A stretch of DNA of 64,000 nt, from positions 182,769 through 246,768 of IMG/VR virus record IMGVR_UViG_3300025161_000004; one strand, 5' to 3'. This document shows positions 3,307 to 54,286 of the stretch, piece after piece. The notes beneath the pieces are model-generated. The model saw only the letters and a program-made list of their open reading frames with translations, was not told where the DNA came from and made no database searches. The position numbers and the translations under genes are program-made. How positions within the stretch are numbered: the first letter of the stretch is position 1; every line of letters begins with the position of its first letter.

Positions 3307-3376
3307 TTTTTTTGTATTTTTTTATAAATACTATAAATACGTCAAAAAATGAAAAAAATCATACATGATAATTACA

Positions 3377-5474: not shown

Positions 5475-5504
5475 CAAAGTTATAACTAAATACGTTAATG
5501 TCAA
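5475..5504 (-). promoter_or_regulatory. Promoter of tRNA operon 1
   Basis: TTGACA...GTATTTA...TAACTTTG (Bacteroidota -7 TAnnTTTG). Confidence 0.7.
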
Positions 5505-10878: not shown

Positions 10879-10920
10879 TGATAATTAATTAAACCTTTTA
10901 TACTTTTGTAACGTATTTAA
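10879..10920 (+). promoter_or_regulatory. Promoter of tRNA operon 2
   Basis: TACTTTTG at 10901-10908, followed by ACGTATTTA. Confidence 0.7.
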
Positions 10921-22802: not shown

Positions 22803-22994
22803 CGGTTGCAAATATAAAACGTTGCAACATAAATGTTAATTAAATACGACAATTTTTAAAATTTAACATATAATAATAATTGAAACACGACAGCAACGTT
22901 TTTGTTGTTATAAGTTATATTGAAATTTATCTTGATACTAAGCTAAATTTATCCATCCGATAATCAATATATTATAAAATAATTTAAAATTTTC

Positions 22995-23035
22995 TTGACA
23001 AATCTGAATAATTCGTGTACTTTTGACACGAATTA
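22995..23035 (+). promoter_or_regulatory. NAD operon promoter overlapped by a candidate NrtR operator
   Basis: TTGACA at 22995; perfect palindrome TAATTCGTGT-ACTTTTG-ACACGAATTA (23009-23035) containing the TACTTTTG -7 box. Confidence 0.75.
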
Positions 23036-23048
23036 ATAGTATTTATAA

Positions 23049-23504
23049 GTGAATGGTAAAATAAAAACTGTTTTTTTTGACCAGATTAATTTGTGTATAA
23101 ATTACAATAATATGATGACATTTAGGGATATAGTTCAAATTATTGAAAACATAACCTATAAAAGGGGGTGGTCAATTTTAGTGAATGTGGATGGTCTTGA
23201 AAAAAGACCATATCTTCAAGTAGAATTTAATGCTGAAGATGCTGAAACTGGGAATGTGGAAAAGCAGAGATGTAGAAAATGGATGTTGTCATATCACATG
23301 ACCACTACTGAAATTGTGTATACCGCATTAAAAGCTATTCAAGCTGCAGAAGACCATGAAACAAGAGAATTCTTCAGATATAAGAATGTTCGTATTGTCA
23401 ATCCACACTTTTCGGTGGATGATATTGTTAAAATGGTGAATCAAAAGAAATTAAACGAAGAATCAAGAATCTTAATCCCTTCATGTGGGACTGATAAAAA
23501 TTAA
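23049..23504 (+). CDS. Hypothetical protein, first gene of the NAD operon
   Basis: RKWMLSYHMTTTEIV.TA...HE.RE.F; true start probably a later ATG. Confidence 0.7.
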   Translation: MNGKIKTVFFDQINLCINYNNMMTFRDIVQIIENITYKRGWSILVNVDGLEKRPYLQVEFNAEDAETGNVEKQRCRKWMLSYHMTTTEIVYTALKAIQAAEDHETREFFRYKNVRIVNPHFSVDDIVKMVNQKKLNEESRILIPSCGTDKN

Positions 23505-23533
23505 ACTTTTATGAATAAAAAATCACAGATAAT

Positions 23534-24466
23534 ATGGAGGAAGTTAAAAAAAAATATGATATAGGGGTAATCATAGGACGTTTTCAAGTTCACGAATTAC
23601 ACGATGCACATAAGGGAATGATAGAAGAGGTTCTATCAAGACATGAAAAGGTAATTTTGTTTTTAGGGGTATCTCCTACACTTTCTACAAAAAGAAATCC
23701 ACTTGATTTCTTATCAAGAAAAGTAATGTTTGAAGAAGAATATGGTAATCGCATTTCTGTGATCTTACCATTATACGATAAAAAATCTGACTATGTTTGG
23801 TCTAAACAAGTCGATACTAAAATTCGTGAAGTATTTCCGCTTGGCTCTGTTGTTCTTTATGGGTCAAGAGATTCGTTTATCCCACATTATAAGGGAGAAT
23901 TTGATGTGATTGAATTAGTACCAAGTTCTTTAGTATCCGCAACTGAAATCAGAGAATCTGTATCTAAAAGAGTTGAGCGTAAAAAAGAATTTCGTGCAGG
24001 TGTTATTTATGCATGTTATAATACATTTGATTTGGTTCATCCTGTAGTCGATGTTGCAATTATGAATGATGATGAAACAATGGTTCTTCTTGGTAGAAAG
24101 AAAGATGAAACAGAATTTCGATTTATTGGTGGATTTGTTGATGTTACAGATGAATCTTTGGAACAGACAGTAAGACGTGAAGTATATGAGGAAACTGGAT
24201 TAGAAATTGACAATATTCAATACATCGCATCAATAAAGGTAAATGATTGGAGATATCGTTTAGATAAAGAACGTTCTGTTATGACATCATTTTTTAAGGC
24301 AAAGAAGATTTTTGGTGGTGGTTCTGAACAAGCCAAAGATGATATTGCTGAAGTAAAATGGTTTGACATTAATAAAATTAATGGAACTCAAATTGTTAGT
24401 GAGCATTTGAAACTACTCAACATCCTAAAAAATTTACTAAAAACCCAAAAGCTAAATAATTCTTAA
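23534..24466 (+). CDS. nadM: Bifunctional NMN adenylyltransferase / Nudix ADP-ribose pyrophosphatase
   Basis: GRFQVHELHDAH...RNPL...SAT, then Nudix box GG...EQTVRREVYEETG. Confidence 0.9.
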   Translation: MEEVKKKYDIGVIIGRFQVHELHDAHKGMIEEVLSRHEKVILFLGVSPTLSTKRNPLDFLSRKVMFEEEYGNRISVILPLYDKKSDYVWSKQVDTKIREVFPLGSVVLYGSRDSFIPHYKGEFDVIELVPSSLVSATEIRESVSKRVERKKEFRAGVIYACYNTFDLVHPVVDVAIMNDDETMVLLGRKKDETEFRFIGGFVDVTDESLEQTVRREVYEETGLEIDNIQYIASIKVNDWRYRLDKERSVMTSFFKAKKIFGGGSEQAKDDIAEVKWFDINKINGTQIVSEHLKLLNILKNLLKTQKLNNS

Positions 24467-24483
24467 CTAAAAATTATTAATTT

Positions 24484-25941
24484 ATGAAAACAATTAATTT
24501 AATCCCGAATTTAATTCTAAGAACTGATAGCTATAAACTTAGTCACTGGAAACAATATCCGAAAGGTATGACTAAAGTATATTCATATCTTGAAAGTAGA
24601 GGTGGTGCATATCCTGCAACACTATTCTTTGGATTGCAATATTTCTTAAAGCAATTAGAGGGTGTTGTGATTACCATGAAAGACGTTGAAGACGCTGATA
24701 AATTTTCAAAAGCACACTTTGGGAGTGATATCTTTAATAAAGAAGGTTGGAAATATATTGTTAAAGTACATGGTGGCAAACTCCCAATTCGTATTAAAGC
24801 GGTGAAAGAGGGTACATTAGTACCAACACGTAATGTTTTGATGACTATTGAAAATACTGATGAAAATTGTTTCTGGTTAACTAATGCAATGGAAACAATG
24901 CTAATGCGTATTTGGTATCCGATTACAATTGCAACAAATAGTTTTTATGCAAAACAAATGATAGCAAAATATTTAAAAACCAGTGCAAATGATTTAAATT
25001 CATTACCTTTTAAACTTCATGATTTCGGATATCGTGGTGTGTCAAGTGAAGAAAGTGCTGGTGTTGGTGGTATGGCTCACTTGGTAAATTTCATGGGTAC
25101 AGATACTCTTGCAGCAATTGTATATTCTAATGAATATTATAATGCTGGTGGTGTAAATGCATTTTCAGTTCCTGCATCTGAACACTCTGTGGCTTGTTCA
25201 TTTGGAAAAGAAAATGAAGAAGAATATTTCTTGAACATGCTTAATCAGTATCCTACAGGTATTGTATCGATAGTATCTGACACATATGATGTATTCAATT
25301 TTGTTGATTCTATGTCGAAGAAACATAAAAAGAAAATTCTTGAACGTCAAGGTACTACAGTATTTCGTCCTGATTCTGGGGATCCGATTGATGTTAATGT
25401 TAAATTAATCAACATCCTTTGGAATGTGTTTGGTGATGTAGGTTCTATTACTAAAACAGGACATAAATTATTACCACCACAAGTACGACTTATTCAAGGT
25501 GATGGTATTGATTTGAAAACATTAGATCAAATTCTTAAAACTGTTACTGACTTAGGATTCTCAGCTGAAAATTGGGTGTTCGGTTCTGGTGGTGGGCTTC
25601 TTCAAAAATTTGATCGTGATACATTGAAGTTTGCGATTAAAGCATCCTATGGTGAGAGAATAGTTGATGGAAATCGTCTAGAATTTGATATTCAGAAAGA
25701 CCCTATCACTTCATCTGGTAAGAAAAGTAAAGCAGGTAAATTGAAATTGGTAAAATCTCAATTAGATGGTGAGTTTTTCACTGTAACAAGTGAGCACCCA
25801 CATTTCGAAAAATTTAAAGATGAATTAGAGGTTGTATTTGAAAACGGTGAGATTAAGAGAACTCAGCAATTCGAAGAGATAAGAGTTCTTGCAAATTCAT
25901 TTATAAAAATTAATTCAGATGTAGAATATCAGAATCACTGA
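24484..25941 (+). CDS. nadV: Nicotinamide phosphoribosyltransferase
   Basis: TDSYKLSHW, LHDFGYRG, PASEHS, VSDTYD, RPDSG, QGDG, GSGGGLLQ. Confidence 0.95.
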   Translation: MKTINLIPNLILRTDSYKLSHWKQYPKGMTKVYSYLESRGGAYPATLFFGLQYFLKQLEGVVITMKDVEDADKFSKAHFGSDIFNKEGWKYIVKVHGGKLPIRIKAVKEGTLVPTRNVLMTIENTDENCFWLTNAMETMLMRIWYPITIATNSFYAKQMIAKYLKTSANDLNSLPFKLHDFGYRGVSSEESAGVGGMAHLVNFMGTDTLAAIVYSNEYYNAGGVNAFSVPASEHSVACSFGKENEEEYFLNMLNQYPTGIVSIVSDTYDVFNFVDSMSKKHKKKILERQGTTVFRPDSGDPIDVNVKLINILWNVFGDVGSITKTGHKLLPPQVRLIQGDGIDLKTLDQILKTVTDLGFSAENWVFGSGGGLLQKFDRDTLKFAIKASYGERIVDGNRLEFDIQKDPITSSGKKSKAGKLKLVKSQLDGEFFTVTSEHPHFEKFKDELEVVFENGEIKRTQQFEEIRVLANSFIKINSDVEYQNH

Positions 25942-25994
25942 ATTATAAAATAAGATAGTTCAATACTTAAATTTACAATATTAATAGAAGCAAT

Positions 25995-26924
25995 ATGATA
26001 AAAATTTTCCCACAATCGAATAGTCTTAAATTTACTGAGCAACTGGTAAATTCTAATTCTGTATTGGAAACTGGTAGAGCAAATTACTATAGTTTGGGTA
26101 AAATACATAAGACCAAATTTGCTAATGGTGAGATTACTGTTGTATTTGAAGAATCGGTTCGAAATGAATCGATTGTGATTGTATCACAACCAAAAACATA
26201 TGAAGATATTTTCGAACTTCTTGAGACAATTGATGCAGCAAGAAGATCTTCAGCGAAAGAAATCATCGGAGTGATACCATCATTACCACATTCAAGACAA
26301 GAAAGAAGAGAGAATGGTGTAAGAACAACAATCTCGGCAAGATTAATTGCTGATATATTACAAGTTGCTGGTCTTGACAGATTAATAACTATGGATGTTC
26401 ATACTACCGCCATTGAAGGATTTTATAAAATACCATTTGATAATATTGATCCTTTTGATAGTATTCTAAAAAAAATAAAAACATTGAATTTGCAAAACCC
26501 TACAATTGTATCACCAGATTTTGGCGGTATGAAACGAGCAAAAAAATATGCTAATAAGTTAGGGTATAATATAGCATTCATTAGTAAGGAAAGATTAAAA
26601 GCAAATGAAGTTGAAAGTATGACATTAATTGGATCAGTAAAAGATTCGGATGTCATTATTGTTGATGATATGATTGATACTGGTGCTACTATATTGAAAG
26701 GGCTTGATTTGCTTAAAGAGAATGGTGCAAAGAACTTTTATGTATTTGCTACACATGGTGTATTTTCTAATGACGCTATTAATAAGTTTGCAACTAATCA
26801 TAATTTTCCACATGTTTACATAACAAATACAATACCTGTAGATAATCATAGTAATTTTGTTAACATTAAAGAAATTAATGTTATTTCCGAATTTGATAAG
26901 GCATTAAGAAAAATTTTTATATAA
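25995..26924 (+). CDS. prs: Ribose-phosphate pyrophosphokinase family protein
   Basis: FANGE, SRQERR, DVH, SPDFGG, IVDDMIDTGAT, THGVFS. Confidence 0.9.
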   Translation: MIKIFPQSNSLKFTEQLVNSNSVLETGRANYYSLGKIHKTKFANGEITVVFEESVRNESIVIVSQPKTYEDIFELLETIDAARRSSAKEIIGVIPSLPHSRQERRENGVRTTISARLIADILQVAGLDRLITMDVHTTAIEGFYKIPFDNIDPFDSILKKIKTLNLQNPTIVSPDFGGMKRAKKYANKLGYNIAFISKERLKANEVESMTLIGSVKDSDVIIVDDMIDTGATILKGLDLLKENGAKNFYVFATHGVFSNDAINKFATNHNFPHVYITNTIPVDNHSNFVNIKEINVISEFDKALRKIFI

Positions 26925-27337
26925 TGTGCATAATAAAAGCAATCGATAAAGCACTAAAAAATAAAGAAAAAAAGGGTTGGGATAAGATTTATTTTTATTT
27001 TGACATTCATGAGACAATTCTTTATCCCGATTATAATAATGAAGAACCTTTAAAATTTTACAAACACGCTAAAGAAGTTTTACAATATCTTTCTAATAGA
27101 AGTGATATTGAATTGGGTTTATTTACTTGTTCGTATCCACAAGAAATAAAGCGTTATAGAAAATTTTTTATGGATAATGGTATTATTTTTAGGTATGCAA
27201 ATAAAAATCCTGATGTTGAAGATACTGCATATGGATATTATGAAGATAAACCCTATTTTAATGTATTATTTGAAGATAAAGCAGGTTTTGATGCTGAAAA
27301 TGATTGGATATTAGTAAAAAATTATTTTGGTATTTAA
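26924..27337 (+). CDS. Hypothetical HAD-like protein
   Basis: FDIHETI...KPYFNVLFEDKAGFD. Confidence 0.6.
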   Translation: MCIIKAIDKALKNKEKKGWDKIYFYFDIHETILYPDYNNEEPLKFYKHAKEVLQYLSNRSDIELGLFTCSYPQEIKRYRKFFMDNGIIFRYANKNPDVEDTAYGYYEDKPYFNVLFEDKAGFDAENDWILVKNYFGI

Positions 27338-27358
27338 TTTTTTTATTATATTTGTGAT

Positions 27359-27973
27359 ATGAGAAAAAAGTACATAACAACAATTTTGTTAGTTACGACT
27401 CTCGTATCAACAGCTAACAATAAAAAAATAGATTTACATGCCCTTAATGATTCTTCAAAAAAGGGTATGATTAATTCTAATTTAATACTTGAAGAACCTA
27501 AAGTGGTATGTCCTGAAGATATTGTTATTAGGGATTTTCACGTATTACATCCAGCTTTTAGAAATAAAGTAGTATTATTATTTATTGAAGCTAAAAAACA
27601 GGGTATTGATTTAGTTATTTCGGAAACATATAGAACACCTGAAAGGCAAAATATGTTATATAATAAAAAATTAACTAAAGTTAAGTCAGGTAAATCAAAA
27701 CATCAATATGGTTTAGCAATTGATCTTATACCAGTGATAAATAATAAATCACAGGCAAATAATGATGAAGTATTAAAACGTGTTGGAATTATTGGTGAAA
27801 AATTAGGATTAAAATGGGGTGGTAGATGGAAATTCTATGATCCTGTCCATTTTGAATATAAATGGAATATTAATGATGCATTGAGTGGTAGATTACCTGA
27901 AATACCCGATACATTAATTATTCCAGATACTGATTTTTTCTACAAAAATATTAAAAGAACAAATATAGAATAA
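27359..27973 (+). CDS. M15-family peptidoglycan peptidase with N-terminal signal
   Basis: ETYRTPERQ...SKHQYGLAIDL...WGG.W...D..HFE. Confidence 0.85.
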   Translation: MRKKYITTILLVTTLVSTANNKKIDLHALNDSSKKGMINSNLILEEPKVVCPEDIVIRDFHVLHPAFRNKVVLLFIEAKKQGIDLVISETYRTPERQNMLYNKKLTKVKSGKSKHQYGLAIDLIPVINNKSQANNDEVLKRVGIIGEKLGLKWGGRWKFYDPVHFEYKWNINDALSGRLPEIPDTLIIPDTDFFYKNIKRTNIE

Positions 27974-28437
27974 TGATTGAGTATAAACCACCATACGACA
28001 TTCGCACCATTAATTTATCCAATAAATCAGTATTTCTTGCAGGCACAATTGAAATGGGTAAATCAATTGATTGGCAAAGAGAAATTGTTGAATTGTTAAA
28101 AGATGAAGATATAATTGTTTTAAATCCAAGAAGAGATGATTGGGATTCATCATGGGTTCAAAGTATCGAGAACCCGCAATTTAAAGAACAAGTTGAATGG
28201 GAATTGTATGGTATAGAAAATGTAACGAAGGTAATAATGTGTTTTATGCCTAATACATTATCACCAATATCTATGCTTGAATTGGGATTATGTTTGAAAA
28301 GGGGTAATGTCATAGTTTATTGTCCAAAAGATTTTTGGAGAAAGGGAAATATAGATGTAACTTGCTCAGTGTATGGTATTCCAGTGTTTGATGACTTCGA
28401 TCTTTTTAAAGATAAGATTAAATCAATTTTAAAATAA
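27973..28437 (+). CDS. Nucleoside 2-deoxyribosyltransferase-like protein
   Basis: VFLAGTIEMG...WQ...NPRRDDW...QVEWEL...SPISMLELG. Confidence 0.85.
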   Translation: MIEYKPPYDIRTINLSNKSVFLAGTIEMGKSIDWQREIVELLKDEDIIVLNPRRDDWDSSWVQSIENPQFKEQVEWELYGIENVTKVIMCFMPNTLSPISMLELGLCLKRGNVIVYCPKDFWRKGNIDVTCSVYGIPVFDDFDLFKDKIKSILK

Positions 28438-28442
28438 CAAAT

Positions 28443-29111
28443 ATGAAAGTTGCTGTTGATGCAGTGGTATTTGCTTATATTAATAAAGAATTGAATATTC
28501 TTCTTATTGAAAGAGCATTTGAACCATTTAAGGGTAAATTATCTTTGGCTGGTGGTTTTATTAATGAAAATGAGACTGCAGATCAGGCAGTTATTAGAAA
28601 ATTAAAAGAAGAAACTAATGTGAAATTGAACTATCTTGAACAACTATTTACATTCACAGACGTGGATCGTGATCCAAGAGAGAGAATTATATCTATAGCA
28701 TATTATGCTTTAATTAATCCAACAAATCATAATTTAGAAGCTAATATTCATGCTAAAGACGTTAACTGGTATCCAGTTAGTAAACTGGAATATTTACCAA
28801 TAGCTTTTGATCACTATAAGATTATAAACTATGGGATAACACGTTTAAAGAATAAGGTGATTTATGAACCAATAGGGTTTGAATTATTACCAAAATATTT
28901 TTCAATGAGTGATTTGTATGATTTATACTGTGCAATACTTGGTAATAATTTAGATAGAAGAAATTTTATTAAAAAAATAACCAGTTTTGGTTTATTAAAA
29001 AAAACTAAATTTAAAACAAAAGGTCATATAGGTAGACGTGCTCAGTTATTTGAGTTCGATCAAAAAAAATATGAAAAACTTAAACTGAATGGATTTAAGT
29101 TTGATATTTGA
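28443..29111 (+). CDS. nrtR: NrtR-family Nudix/wHTH regulator
   Basis: VAVDAVVF...LAGGF...EETN...RDPRER...AFDH; C-terminal LDRRNF...GRRAQLF wHTH. Confidence 0.9.
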   Translation: MKVAVDAVVFAYINKELNILLIERAFEPFKGKLSLAGGFINENETADQAVIRKLKEETNVKLNYLEQLFTFTDVDRDPRERIISIAYYALINPTNHNLEANIHAKDVNWYPVSKLEYLPIAFDHYKIINYGITRLKNKVIYEPIGFELLPKYFSMSDLYDLYCAILGNNLDRRNFIKKITSFGLLKKTKFKTKGHIGRRAQLFEFDQKKYEKLKLNGFKFDI

Positions 29112-32993: not shown

Positions 32994-33404
32994 CAAAAAA
33001 AATATTTTTTATTATAATTATCTTTGATAACCATTGTAAGACATATAGTATTTTATACCAGTTCTTATTTACGTAAAAGTTATATAGTATTGAATATTAT
33101 TCAAATTAATGTGTTTTAGTGTTTAGCTTTTTTATTTATATTTGTACTTATAGAAATAAGTTATTATGAATAAAGTGATTGAAAAAGCAAAAACGATAAT
33201 TATATCATTAATTTCATATGAGGTTGCAAGTAAAAAATTTGGTTTTAGATTATATTCTAAAAAGTTTATCGATAATCAAGTTAATCGATACACCCATATC
33301 TAAAGGGATGATTATATTATTTTTTTCGTGTCTTGAATTATCTAATATATTCAATTGACAAATTGAAACTACTGATATATATTTGTTTTTTTAGTTTAAA
33401 ATCT

Positions 33405-41163: not shown

Positions 41164-41433
41164 ATGAATTTTGGTTTAAAAGAAAAAATCATTGAATTGC
41201 GCAAACAAAAATTAACTTACAATCAGATAGCCGAAAGGCTGAATTGTGCCAAATCTACTATTTCATATCATTGTCAAAAAGAGGGTTTAGATGACATCGG
41301 ATTAAAACTTAATCCTGTCGAAAAAAATGTCGTGAAACAAATTAAGAGCTTTACTCGTAATAATTCTTTAAATGCTGCTGTCAAACATTTTGGATTGTCA
41401 AAAACGACAATTATAAAATATAAGAAATTATAA
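41164..41433 (+). CDS. Double-HTH small protein (possibly a truncated homing endonuclease)
   Basis: TYNQIAERLNCAKSTISYH; AVKHFGLSKTTI. Confidence 0.6.
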   Translation: MNFGLKEKIIELRKQKLTYNQIAERLNCAKSTISYHCQKEGLDDIGLKLNPVEKNVVKQIKSFTRNNSLNAAVKHFGLSKTTIIKYKKL

Positions 41434-42278: not shown

Positions 42279-42299
42279 TAAACCTTTTCTTGGCAAGAA

Positions 42300-42319
42300 C
42301 GTATTTATGTGTATATTTG
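42300..42319 (+). promoter_or_regulatory. Promoter of tRNA operon 5
   Basis: CGTATTTAT, then TATATTTG at 42312-42319. Confidence 0.7.
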
Positions 42320-43039: not shown

Positions 43040-43110
43040 GCCCGAATGGTGTAAATAGTAGCATACTTGCTACGCAGCAAGAGGTGTTGGTTCAAGTCCA
43101 ACTTCGGGCC
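43040..43110 (+). pseudogene. Atypical tRNA with a 6-nt anticodon loop (Arg ACG-like)
   Basis: CTTGC-TACGCA-GCAAG; D loop lacks GG; acceptor and T stems intact. Confidence 0.5.
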
Positions 43111-47690: not shown

Positions 47691-47764
47691 GTAACCAAGA
47701 TGATTAAATTTTCGTATAATACAACAAATACGATCCATTAGCATAGTGGTTAATGTAGGACTCT
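47691..47764 (+). repeat. Second copy of the direct repeat (intact tRNA 5' half)
   Basis: See 45964-46036. Confidence 0.85.
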
Positions 47765-47803
47765 CTAAAAGTCTTGAGGTGGGTTCGATTCCCACATGGA
47801 TCA
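47732..47803 (+). tRNA. Amber suppressor tRNA(CTA)
   Basis: GATCCAT/ATGGATC acceptor; GGACT-CTCTAAA-AGTCT; GTGGG-TTCGATT-CCCAC. Confidence 0.88.
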
Positions 47804-47932
47804 CAAAAATTTATTAAATATGATCTTAAAGATATATCACAACACCAATCGGAAGGTTGAATATGAACTGTGGGCTGTGGTGTTTTTATTTAAAAATCAT
47901 AAAAAATAACTTAACAATTTGAAACTTTTTAA

Positions 47933-49511: not shown

Positions 49512-49563
49512 TACTTGACACATTTGTTATTATTGGTTAAATTTGTTAAAAAAATATTTGTTT

Positions 49564-54223: not shown

Positions 54224-54286
54224 TATAATTGACTTGACATCATAATTCTTGCTTAATATATTTGTATATTATTATTCATTACTGGT

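What the first reader, a model, noticed from the sequence alone, without database searches (positions are those of the whole stretch)
22995..29111. NrtR operator on the NAD salvage operon: an ADP-ribose-inducible counter-defence
Seen: a perfect palindrome with 10-bp arms, TAATTCGTGT-ACTTTTG-ACACGAATTA (23009-23035), whose 7-nt spacer is part of the -7 promoter box. It precedes a tightly packed run of genes ending in an nrtR gene. Established: NrtR repressors bind palindromes with a GT-N7-AC core (as I recall the consensus) and are released by ADP-ribose; SIR2/TIR/SEFIR defences cleave NAD+ into ADP-ribose and nicotinamide; phages rebuild NAD+ through the NARP1 and NARP2 pathways. Inference: the phage detects the product of host NADase defence and derepresses its NAD rebuilding genes, the same demand-sensing logic as the tRNA attenuators.
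Basis: partly seen in the sequence, partly recalled or inferred. Interest (0 to 1): 0.82.

Follow-up and report, generated by a model that had tools for sequence, protein, structure and literature searches.

The report
Phage NrtR repressor gating NAD salvage
A large phage of Bacteroidota-type bacteria carries its own NrtR-type repressor together with two matching operator sites on the promoter of its NAD-rebuilding genes, so this costly pathway looks switched by a metabolite, although which metabolite is still untested.

Summary
A perfect 10+7+10 palindrome lies at 23009-23035. Its spacer is the -7 box of a promoter class that recurs in this phage (cTTGACA-N16/17-TAnnTTTG). Eight tightly packed genes follow (23112-29111): unknown, NMNAT-Nudix, Nampt, Prs, HAD-like, M15 peptidase, NDT-like, NrtR.

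The NrtR-operator reading is strongly supported in silico. The site fits the published 21-bp GT-N7-AC consensus. A second, degenerate site (23090-23110) abuts the first start codon. Both sites are conserved in six independent relatives while their flanks diverge. In one relative, nrtR lies 6 kb away and the sites stay with the NAD genes. GTGT-N7-ACAC accompanies this NrtR subfamily across Bacteroidota genomes. It is absent from 43 phage Nampt loci with no nrtR nearby. The protein keeps the BtAraR residues that read GTGT.

Not shown: that ADP-ribose is the inducer, or that host NADase defence is what is sensed. The ligand pocket is mixed: two of six SoNrtR ADP-ribose contacts are kept, the adenine-binding N-terminal arm is missing, and the Nudix box is nearly intact. 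The enzymes are NARP2-type plus Prs, not NARP1.

Verdict: a new, phage-borne member of the NrtR regulon kind. I found no description of it in the literature searched.

The parts
22995..23000 (+). -33 box TTGACA of the operon promoter
   Evidence: It is part of the composite TTGAC-N15-21-TAnnTTTG, found 6 times against 0.71 expected, with 0 of 100 shuffles reaching 6. The same architecture precedes the tRNA clusters. It is conserved in relatives.
23009..23035 (.). Operator O1: perfect palindrome; 21-bp core 23012-23032, TTCGTGT-N7-ACACGAA
   Evidence: Fits the NrtR consensus GT-N7-AC. The GTGTA-N6-ACA core is invariant in 7 aligned relatives.
23018..23025 (+). -7 box TACTTTTG (TAnnTTTG), lying in the operator spacer
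   Evidence: Relatives have TAACTTTG at the same place.
23052..23078 (+). Leader stem plus T-run between the two operators (weak in this phage)
   Evidence: In L135, L003, L137 and L138 there is an AUGGC..GCCAU stem followed by a U-run, with z down to -4.1. In the window and in L134 z is about 0. Role unknown.
23090..23110 (.). Operator O2: degenerate site TTTGTGT-N7-ACAATAA, ending 1 bp before the start codon
   Evidence: It is the only other match in 64 kb at up to 3 mismatches. It is conserved in L135, L003, L137, L138, L134 and L004.
23112..23504 (+). First gene, 130 aa, unknown function (phrog_1540)
   Evidence: Atlas search uninformative. Present in L003, L135, L137 and L138; absent in L134 and L004.
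23534..24466 (+). NMN adenylyltransferase fused to Nudix (NadM/NatV-like)
   Evidence: Pfam NUDIX 9e-18; PHROG cytidyltransferase for the N-terminal half; PDB 2qjt NadM-Nudix 1.8e-9.
24484..25941 (+). Nicotinamide phosphoribosyltransferase (Nampt/NadV), canonical type
   Evidence: Pfam NAMPT_N plus NAPRTase. PDB Nampt entries at 1e-130, far better than the three divergent entries at 1e-67 to 1e-78.
25995..26924 (+). PRPP synthetase (Prs), canonical type
   Evidence: Pfam. PDB PRPS at 2e-58, aligned to E. coli PRPS through residue 304 of 316, so it keeps the C-terminal module that Adps has lost (PMC13586617).
26924..27337 (+). Small HAD-like protein, 137 aa
   Evidence: PHROG 1238. It travels with nrtR-NMNAT-Nampt-Prs in cellular cassettes at 48-54% identity.
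27359..27973 (+). M15 peptidase (endolysin-like)
   Evidence: Pfam Peptidase_M15_4 6e-15. The called genes of the operons in L135, L137 and L138 include no such peptidase.
27973..28437 (+). Nucleoside 2-deoxyribosyltransferase-like protein
   Evidence: Pfam PF15891 1e-32. Homologs at 50-53% identity sit next to nrtR-prs in Aquimarina genomes.
28443..29111 (+). NrtR-family regulator, 222 aa (Nudix-like domain plus winged helix)
   Evidence: Pfam NrtR_WHD 1.6e-19 and NUDIX 2.6e-16. PDB BtAraR 1e-43 and SoNrtR 1e-29. Model pLDDT 90.6, TM 0.86 to BtAraR and 0.81 to the SoNrtR-DNA complex.

Best explanation
The phage encodes an NrtR-family repressor as the last gene of an eight-gene NAD-salvage operon. 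A dimer of this protein binds two GTGT(A)-N6/7-ACA operators. O1 wraps the -7 box of the operon's host-sigma-type promoter and blocks RNA polymerase. O2 lies 78 bp downstream, against the first start codon. Because nrtR is inside the unit it represses, the operon is negatively autoregulated. It would fire on entry, or be held off by a host NrtR of the same specificity, and then shut down as NrtR accumulates. A small ligand bound in the Nudix-like pocket releases the repressor. The pocket points to a phosphorylated ribose compound, with ADP-ribose the leading candidate. Expression of NMNAT-Nudix, Nampt and Prs would then rise when NAD is being broken down. Shown in silico: the sites, their promoter position, their conservation, their co-occurrence with the regulator, and the regulator's fold and DNA-reading residues. 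Inferred: binding, repression, autoregulation, ligand identity, and any link to host defence.
For: - The site fits the published 21-bp GT-N7-AC consensus.
- Both sites in the window lie in this one promoter region.
- The promoter class is enriched: 6 copies against 0.71 expected.
- O1 and O2 are conserved in L135, L003, L137, L138, L134 and L004 while the flanks diverge.
- In L134, nrtR lies 6 kb away and the sites stay with the NAD genes.
- GTGTA-N6-ACA: 18 of 27 matches in 229 kb fall within 160 bp upstream of the NAD operon, against 0.06 expected.
- A motif-only scan of 2.9 million viral contigs gave 6 hits, 3 of them in front of NMNAT-Nampt genes of this clade.
- None of 43 phage Nampt loci without nrtR has the site.
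- The motif accompanies this NrtR subfamily in metagenomes and in named Bacteroidota genomes.
- BtAraR residues K179, R180, N181, K184 and R205, which read GTGT, align to R172, R173, N174, K177 and R198, all conserved in the family.
- No promoter of the phage's class lies in front of nrtR, and no strong terminator lies inside the run.
- NARP2 is costly and was toxic when cloned, which gives a reason to gate it.
Against: - No binding, expression or transcript-end data exist. The one possible RNA run held only four short contigs.
- The close relatives share ancestry, so part of the conservation is inheritance.
- The pocket keeps only R24 and R79 of six SoNrtR ADP-ribose contacts. F26 and E57 replace N43 and K76, and the arm carrying Y10 and F15 is absent.
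- The nearest solved relative senses arabinose.
- O1 and O2 are about 7.4 helical turns apart, which does not suggest simple same-face cooperativity.
- Only 64 kb of the 247-kb genome was searched for further sites.
Confidence: 0.72

Rival explanations
1. Same wiring, but the effector is not ADP-ribose. It would be ribose 5-phosphate, PRPP, NMN, NAD or similar. The circuit would then be a cost-limiting homeostat for a PRPP-draining pathway, not a sensor of host NADase defence.
For: - 4 of 6 SoNrtR ADP-ribose contacts are lost, including the whole adenine-binding arm.
- All BtAraR pentose-site residues (R34, R86, H131, F36, F49, F129) are kept as R24, R76, H124, F26, F39 and F122.
- Rodionov 2008 itself proposed ribose 5-phosphate for the Bacteroidetes NrtRs.
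- Effectors vary across the family: NAD for NdnR, arabinose for AraR, and ATP or NAD for NadQ.
- NARP2 over-produces NAD and consumes PRPP even without any defence.
Against: - R79, the counterpart of SoNrtR R98 that contacts ADP-ribose, is invariant, whereas BtAraR has Gly there.
- The Nudix domain superposes on the SoNrtR-ADP-ribose co-crystal at 1.8 A with 38% identity.
- ADP-ribose was the best effector for both NAD-linked NrtRs that have been tested.
Confidence: 0.3
2. The sites are used mainly by the host's own NrtR. The phage protein's chief role would lie elsewhere: repressing or titrating the host NrtR regulon, or acting as an ADP-ribose pyrophosphatase that feeds ribose 5-phosphate to Prs.
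For: - Cellular Bacteroidota NrtRs at about 50% identity share the DNA-reading residues and the GTGT-N7-ACAC motif.
- The Nudix box is nearly intact (G38, E44, R52, E56, E57; only E53K and G59N changed). An intact box correlates with catalysis in this family.
Against: - The operator co-occurs with a phage-encoded nrtR: it is absent from all 43 phage Nampt loci that have no nrtR nearby.
- K53 replaces the glutamate of the box's 'RE' pair. From my own knowledge of MutT, that glutamate is catalytically important.
- This reading adds roles and does not remove self-regulation.
Confidence: 0.1
3. The palindrome works as an RNA hairpin: a terminator of the upstream gene or a 5' leader structure, not a protein-binding site.
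For: The simple scan lists 23009-23035 as terminator-like: 10 pairs, 3 G-C, with a T-rich tail. The two changes in L003, L135, L137 and L138 are G-U-compatible on the + strand.
Against: - The -7 box lies inside the loop, so a transcript from this promoter starts in the right arm and lacks the left arm.
- In L004 only the four GTGT/ACAC base pairs can still pair, yet the GTGT-N7-ACAC core is intact. L134 has a mismatch as well.
- True terminators in this window are G+C-rich stems with T-runs.
- A hairpin role does not explain O2, or the family-wide link between motif and regulator.
Confidence: 0.04
4. A chance palindrome in AT-rich intergenic DNA with no function.
For: Palindromes with 10-bp arms are common in the window. 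The 21-bp pattern with up to 3 mismatches is expected about twice per window by chance.
Against: Conservation, position, the reverse scan and the negative control are incompatible with chance.
Confidence: 0.01

Closest known systems
Bacterial NrtR regulons of NAD salvage (Shewanella oneidensis prs-nadV; Synechocystis nadM-nadV; Cytophaga hutchinsonii nrtR-prs-nadV; Rodionov 2008, PMC2330246)
   Same: A Nudix-like plus winged-helix repressor, a 21-bp palindrome with a GT-N7-AC core, often tandem sites, and the target genes prs, nadV and nadM. Named Flavobacteriia here show nrtR-prs-nadV with the site at -32 to -43. Cytophagia and Chitinophagia genomes carry nrtR, then the operator, then NMNAT-Nudix-Nampt-Prs-HAD.
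   Different: This one is carried by a roughly 247-kb phage. nrtR has moved to the 3' end of the operon. The -7 box sits in the operator spacer rather than over the left arm. The two sites are 78 bp apart rather than 22-26 bp. Extra genes have been added (unknown first gene, M15 peptidase). The phage proteins form their own clade, sister to the Bacteroidota clade.
BtAraR of Bacteroides thetaiotaomicron (PDB 5bs6, 5dd4, 5deq; PMC4666351)
   Same: It is the best sequence and fold match (1e-43, TM 0.86). The residues that read GTGT are the same, as are the pentose-site residues R, R, H.
   Different: BtAraR senses L-arabinose and controls sugar-utilisation genes. It has Gly where the phage protein has R79, and its Nudix box is degraded. 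Its N-terminal arm fills the nucleotide cleft, whereas the phage protein has no such arm.
NARP2 of Vibrio phage KVP40 (Nampt plus NMNAT-Nudix; 10.1101/2024.02.11.579819)
   Same: The same two enzymes, on a large phage. Shown there to counter NAD-depleting defences.
   Different: No regulator is described for KVP40 NARP2. The operon here adds Prs, which supplies PRPP, and a dedicated repressor with operators. Most phage Nampt loci sampled (43 of 45) have no nrtR nearby.
Self-repressed phage counter-defence operons (Aca repressors of anti-CRISPR operons; recalled from my own knowledge, not checked here)
   Same: A phage counter-defence operon that ends in, and is repressed by, its own DNA-binding protein.
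   Different: As I recall, Aca proteins have no ligand-sensing domain. Here the repressor carries a metabolite pocket, so the shut-off could be conditional.

Membership tests
[quoted passage not shown] | [quoted passage not shown] | tested here: met
   Pfam NUDIX 2.6e-16, residues 7-128. The model superposes on the SoNrtR Nudix domain at 1.8 A.
[quoted passage not shown] | C-terminal winged helix-turn-helix DNA-binding domain | tested here: met
   Pfam NrtR_WHD 1.6e-19, residues 145-205. Full-length TM 0.81-0.86 to SoNrtR and BtAraR.
[quoted passage not shown] | Cognate 21-bp palindromic operator with a GT-N7-AC core upstream of the regulated genes | tested here: met
   In silico only. O1 is a perfect match and O2 a degenerate one. 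The sites are conserved and co-occur with the regulator.
[quoted passage not shown] | Positional linkage to NAD metabolism genes | tested here: met
   Same operon as NMNAT-Nudix, Nampt and Prs. The linkage recurs in viral, metagenomic and genomic loci.
[quoted passage not shown] | Specific DNA binding by the purified protein | not testable with these tools
   Needs EMSA or footprinting.
[quoted passage not shown] | Release from DNA by ADP-ribose | tested here: inconclusive
   Residue mapping only. R24 and R79 are kept. N43 becomes F26 and K76 becomes E57. Y10 and F15 are absent with the N-terminal arm.
[quoted passage not shown] | Perturbed Nudix signature (loss of hydrolase activity), typical but not universal in the family | tested here: inconclusive
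   Only 2 of the 9 signature positions of GX5EX7REUXEEXGU are changed (E53K, G59N). E44, R52, E56 and E57 are kept. Activity cannot be judged from sequence.
NARP2 (Nampt plus NMNAT NAD reconstitution pathway) | Canonical Nampt that uses PRPP | tested here: met
   By homology: 1e-130 to bona fide Nampt structures.
NARP2 (Nampt plus NMNAT NAD reconstitution pathway) | NMN adenylyltransferase, here fused to Nudix | tested here: met
   PHROG cytidyltransferase plus Nudix. NadM-Nudix 2qjt at 1.8e-9. This is the weaker of the two assignments.
NARP2 (Nampt plus NMNAT NAD reconstitution pathway) | Counteracts NAD-depleting defence during infection | not testable with these tools
   Needs infection assays.
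NARP1 (Adps plus Namat) | PRPS-like enzyme lacking the C-terminal alpha11-alpha12 module (Adps), paired with a Namat that carries an adenine selectivity clamp | tested here: not met
   The Prs aligns with E. coli PRPS to residue 304 of 316 at 6e-58 (criterion from PMC13586617). The Nampt is far closer to canonical Nampt than to the divergent PDB entries. No named Adps or Namat sequence was available for a direct comparison.

The most novel reading that the evidence does not exclude
A phage counter-defence pathway that is switched on by the product of the defence it counters. ADP-ribose released by SIR2, TIR or SEFIR NADases would lift a phage-encoded NrtR off the promoter of a NARP2-plus-Prs operon, so the phage pays the PRPP cost only when it is attacked. 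NrtR genes occur in at least two separate clades of large phages, which suggests that such gating has been recruited repeatedly.
Probability: 0.35. Interest if true: 0.85.

Novelty: new member of a known kind. Interest (0 to 1): 0.58.

Why it matters
Phage NAD reconstitution pathways (NARP1, NARP2, NARP3) are described as enzyme sets. The searches I ran found no account of how a phage controls them, and none of a phage-encoded NrtR. NARP2 is known to be costly: it over-produces NAD, drains PRPP, and was toxic when cloned.

A phage that brings its own metabolite-sensing repressor and matching operators offers a concrete test system for a broader question: do phages sense the state of the host's immune response and express counter-defence only when needed? 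The parts are small and well defined (a 222-aa protein and a 130-bp control region), so the question can be answered with EMSA and a reporter.

If the effector turns out not to be ADP-ribose, this is still the first regulated phage NAD-salvage module I could find. It is also a clear case of a regulator, its operator and its target genes having moved together between Bacteroidota and their phages.

Tried and rejected
- **Sigma-70 promoter scan:** uninformative at 29% G+C, with 50 sites found against 55.6 expected. I replaced it with the TTGAC/TAnnTTTG composite.
- **Transcript evidence:** the one possible RNA run held only four short contigs, in prs and in nrtR, and all runs are kept as contigs. 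No start sites or operon proof came from it.
- **NARP1 reading of the Nampt/Prs pair:** rejected.
- **Two extra GTGTA-N6-ACA matches inside prs (26317, 26741):** not conserved in relatives, so taken as chance.
- **A second promoter at O2:** there is no TAnnTTTG, and the conserved TTGACC is too close. Not supported.
- **Leader stem plus T-run as an attenuator:** convincing in four relatives but weak in the window and in L134. Left as a side observation.
- **Function of the first gene:** Pfam, PHROG and Atlas gave nothing.
- **Near-identity search in the phage collection:** found no relatives.


Full report
**Observation.** The window reads TAATTCGTGT, ACTTTTG, ACACGAATTA at 23009-23035: a perfect inverted repeat with 10-bp arms and a 7-nt spacer. 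The window is 28.8% G+C. It holds about 20 distinct palindromes with arms of 10 bp or more, many of them G+C-rich stems followed by T-runs. The palindrome alone is therefore not remarkable. The window belongs to IMG/VR contig 3300025161_000004, 246.8 kb long. It carries 35 tRNA genes and has no close relative among deposited phage genomes.

**Genes.** Eight ORFs run from 23112 to 29111 with gaps of 29, 17, 53, -1, 21, -1 and 5 bp. In order they are:
- an unknown 130-aa protein (phrog_1540);
- an NMN adenylyltransferase fused to Nudix;
- Nampt;
- PRPP synthetase (Prs);
- a small HAD-like protein;
- an M15 peptidase;
- a nucleoside 2-deoxyribosyltransferase-like protein;
- a 222-aa protein with NUDIX and NrtR_WHD domains.

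A 282-bp gap follows, then a polynucleotide kinase gene preceded by its own sigma-70-like consensus match. Nampt matches canonical Nampt structures at 1e-130. Prs matches canonical PRPS at 2e-58 through to its C-terminus. Adps homologs have lost that C-terminal module (PMC13586617). The enzyme set is therefore NARP2-type plus Prs, not NARP1.

**Promoter.** A sigma-70 scan is uninformative at this composition. The composite TTGAC-N15-21-TAnnTTTG occurs six times against 0.71 expected, and none of 100 shuffles reach six. The copies read cTTGACA-N16/17-TAnnTTTG and include sites in front of tRNA clusters. As I recall, this is the Bacteroidota type of housekeeping promoter. That fits the nearest cellular relatives of the regulator, which are almost all Bacteroidota. 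In the finding, TTGACA is at 22995-23000 and TACTTTTG at 23018-23025. The -7 box is thus the operator's spacer plus one base of the left arm. Transcription should start near 23030, inside the right arm.

**Operator evidence.** Rodionov et al. 2008 state that most NrtR motifs share 21-bp palindrome symmetry and a GT-N7-AC core. O1 fits perfectly. The evidence then builds in eight steps.
1. Searching the window for the 21-bp pattern with up to three mismatches gives only one other site, 23090-23110. It lies 78 bp downstream and ends just before the first ATG.
2. Loci fetched through the regulator show both sites conserved in L135, L003, L137, L138, L134 and L004, while the sequence between the -33 box and the operator has diverged.
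3. In L134, nrtR sits in another gene cluster about 6 kb away, and the operator pair stays with NMNAT-Nampt-Prs.
4. The shared element GTGTA-N6-ACA was defined on the window's two sites. Across nine loci (229 kb) it has 27 matches, 18 of them within 160 bp upstream of the NAD operon, against 0.06 expected.
5. A scan of 2.9 million viral contigs with the O1 motif alone returned six hits. Three lie in front of NMNAT-Nampt genes of this clade.
6. Of 43 viral loci fetched through Nampt with no nrtR within 10 kb, none has GTGT-N7-ACAC in or near the NAD cluster.
7. In the wider subfamily (43-54% identity, G+C 27-74%), GTGT-N7-ACAC recurs just upstream of nrtR. In metagenomic loci it is often a tandem pair 22-26 bp apart. 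In named Flavobacteriia it sits at a fixed -32 to -43, overlapping a TAnnTTTG box.
8. The BtAraR-DNA structure assigns recognition of GTGT to K179, R180, N181, K184, K204 and R205 (PMC4666351). The phage protein aligns R172, R173, N174, K177 and R198 to five of these (K204 aligns to G197), and these positions are conserved in the family alignment.

A strain variant in a public run carries all 11 of its listed substitutions over 22976-25702 between 23107 and 23146 and leaves both GTGT/ACA cores untouched.

**The regulator.** The AlphaFold model is confident (pLDDT 90.6). It matches BtAraR (TM 0.86) and the SoNrtR-DNA complex (TM 0.81). Its Nudix domain superposes on the SoNrtR-ADP-ribose co-crystal at 1.8 A. 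The ligand pocket gives a mixed picture.
- **Pentose site:** the BtAraR residues R34, R86 and H131 are R24, R76 and H124 here, all invariant.
- **ADP-ribose contacts:** of the SoNrtR contacts, R41 and R98 are kept as R24 and R79. N43 and K76 are replaced by F26 and E57.
- **N-terminal arm:** the arm that supplies Y10 and F15 to the adenine is missing. The ORF cannot extend upstream, and the whole clade starts at the first strand.
- **Nudix box:** it is nearly intact. G38, E44, R52, E56 and E57 are kept, and only E53K and G59N differ. In this family an intact box goes with hydrolase activity.

I read this as a pocket for a phosphorylated ribose compound. ADP-ribose is the leading candidate but is not established.

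**Mechanism.** The best-supported model is promoter occlusion at O1 by a dimer of the phage NrtR, with a second dimer at O2. The operon would be negatively autoregulated, because nrtR is its last gene. No promoter of the phage's class lies in front of nrtR, and no strong terminator lies in the run. A ligand would relieve the repression. Host NrtRs of Bacteroidota share both the motif and the reading residues, so cross-talk in either direction is plausible. A reason for gating exists: NARP2 over-produces NAD even without a defence system, it consumes PRPP, and the KVP40 operon was toxic to clone. Binding, repression, the ligand and any link to defence are all inferences.

**Rivals.** An RNA-hairpin role is unlikely.
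- The left arm lies upstream of the predicted transcription start.
- L004 keeps the GTGT-N7-ACAC core but only those four base pairs of the stem.
- A hairpin explains neither O2 nor the link between motif and regulator.

The main live alternative concerns the effector: a non-ADP-ribose ligand would make this a cost-limiting homeostat rather than a defence sensor.

**Origin and novelty.** In a maximum-likelihood tree, the window's NrtR falls in a phage-only clade (support 100/97). That clade is sister to a Bacteroidota clade, joined at 95/44. A second all-viral clade of twelve also exists. The tree is midpoint-rooted only, so no direction of transfer is claimed. Cellular Cytophagia and Chitinophagia carry nrtR, an operator, then NMNAT-Nudix-Nampt-Prs-HAD at 40-54% identity. 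The phage module is a rearranged version of that cassette. My literature searches found NrtR only in bacteria. Surveys of viral NAD systems and of jumbo-phage NAD genes do not mention a phage Nudix-winged-helix regulator. I therefore file this as a new, phage-borne member of the NrtR regulon kind.

**Limits.** All evidence is computational. The close relatives share ancestry. Only 64 kb of the genome was searched for further sites. The host is unknown.

Noticed in passing
window 23052-23078; L135:4411-4440, L003:5339-5362, L137:5369-5392, L138:5705-5730: Between the two operators, four relatives have a short G+C stem (AUGGC..GCCAU) followed by a U-run: a terminator-like element inside the leader, with z down to -4.1. 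In the window and in L134 it is degenerate (z about 0). It could be an attenuator or a leak-reducing terminator.
   Followed up: partly
window 47732-47804: A tRNA with a CTA anticodon, which ARAGORN calls Pyl. It is an amber suppressor sitting among 35 tRNA genes, which hints that TAG may be read through in part of this genome. The genes of the finding need no read-through.
   Followed up: no
window 43040-43110: ARAGORN reports a tRNA-like gene with a two-base anticodon loop call (cg) and no amino-acid assignment.
   Followed up: no
window 5475-5504(-), 33355-33385, 41250-41277(-), 49515-49545, 54234-54264: Further copies of the promoter class cTTGACA-N16/17-TAnnTTTG. Together with the one in the finding they make 6 copies against 0.71 expected. 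This points to a Bacteroidota-type host sigma factor.
   Followed up: partly
window 3334-3342(-), 5487-5495(-), 10911-10919, 42299-42307; also 23043-23050 as GTATTTAT: The short element ACGTATTTA occurs 4 times against 1.06 expected, each time beside a promoter-like site. GTATTTA is invariant just downstream of O1 in all seven aligned relatives. Meaning unknown.
   Followed up: partly
window 27973-28437; L148, L150, L167, L170 (Aquimarina); L138:6679-7002: A nucleoside 2-deoxyribosyltransferase-like gene (PF15891) travels with nrtR-prs in cellular Flavobacteriia at 50-53% identity. L138 has a DUF1937 gene inserted between the NMNAT and Nampt-family genes. These are unassigned steps of the NrtR-linked NAD module.
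   Followed up: partly
L003:6898-7983, L137:6718-8358, L138:7015-8652: In three relatives the canonical Nampt is replaced by a divergent Nampt-family protein of about 545 aa (28% identity to the window's Nampt). Its best PDB matches are canonical Nampt at only 6e-30, and the three divergent entries at 1e-9. It sits in the same operon as a Prs that is 67% identical to the window's in L003. Its substrate is open.
   Followed up: partly
window 27359-27973: An M15 peptidase of endolysin type sits inside the NAD operon of this phage. The operons of L135, L137 and L138 contain no such gene, so it looks like an insertion.
   Followed up: no
L134:12800-13237, L135:11611-12072: NADAR-domain genes (ADP-ribose processing) and YqeY-like genes lie a few kb from nrtR in two relatives, alongside RNA ligase and polynucleotide kinase genes. 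The neighbourhood is rich in RNA-repair and ADP-ribose-related functions.
   Followed up: no
L028:9915-9965: A GC-rich viral contig of the second NrtR clade has three overlapping CCATGGT-N7-ACCATGG sites directly upstream of nrtR-nampt. The GT-N7-AC core is kept but the arms differ, so this is a different specificity variant.
   Followed up: no
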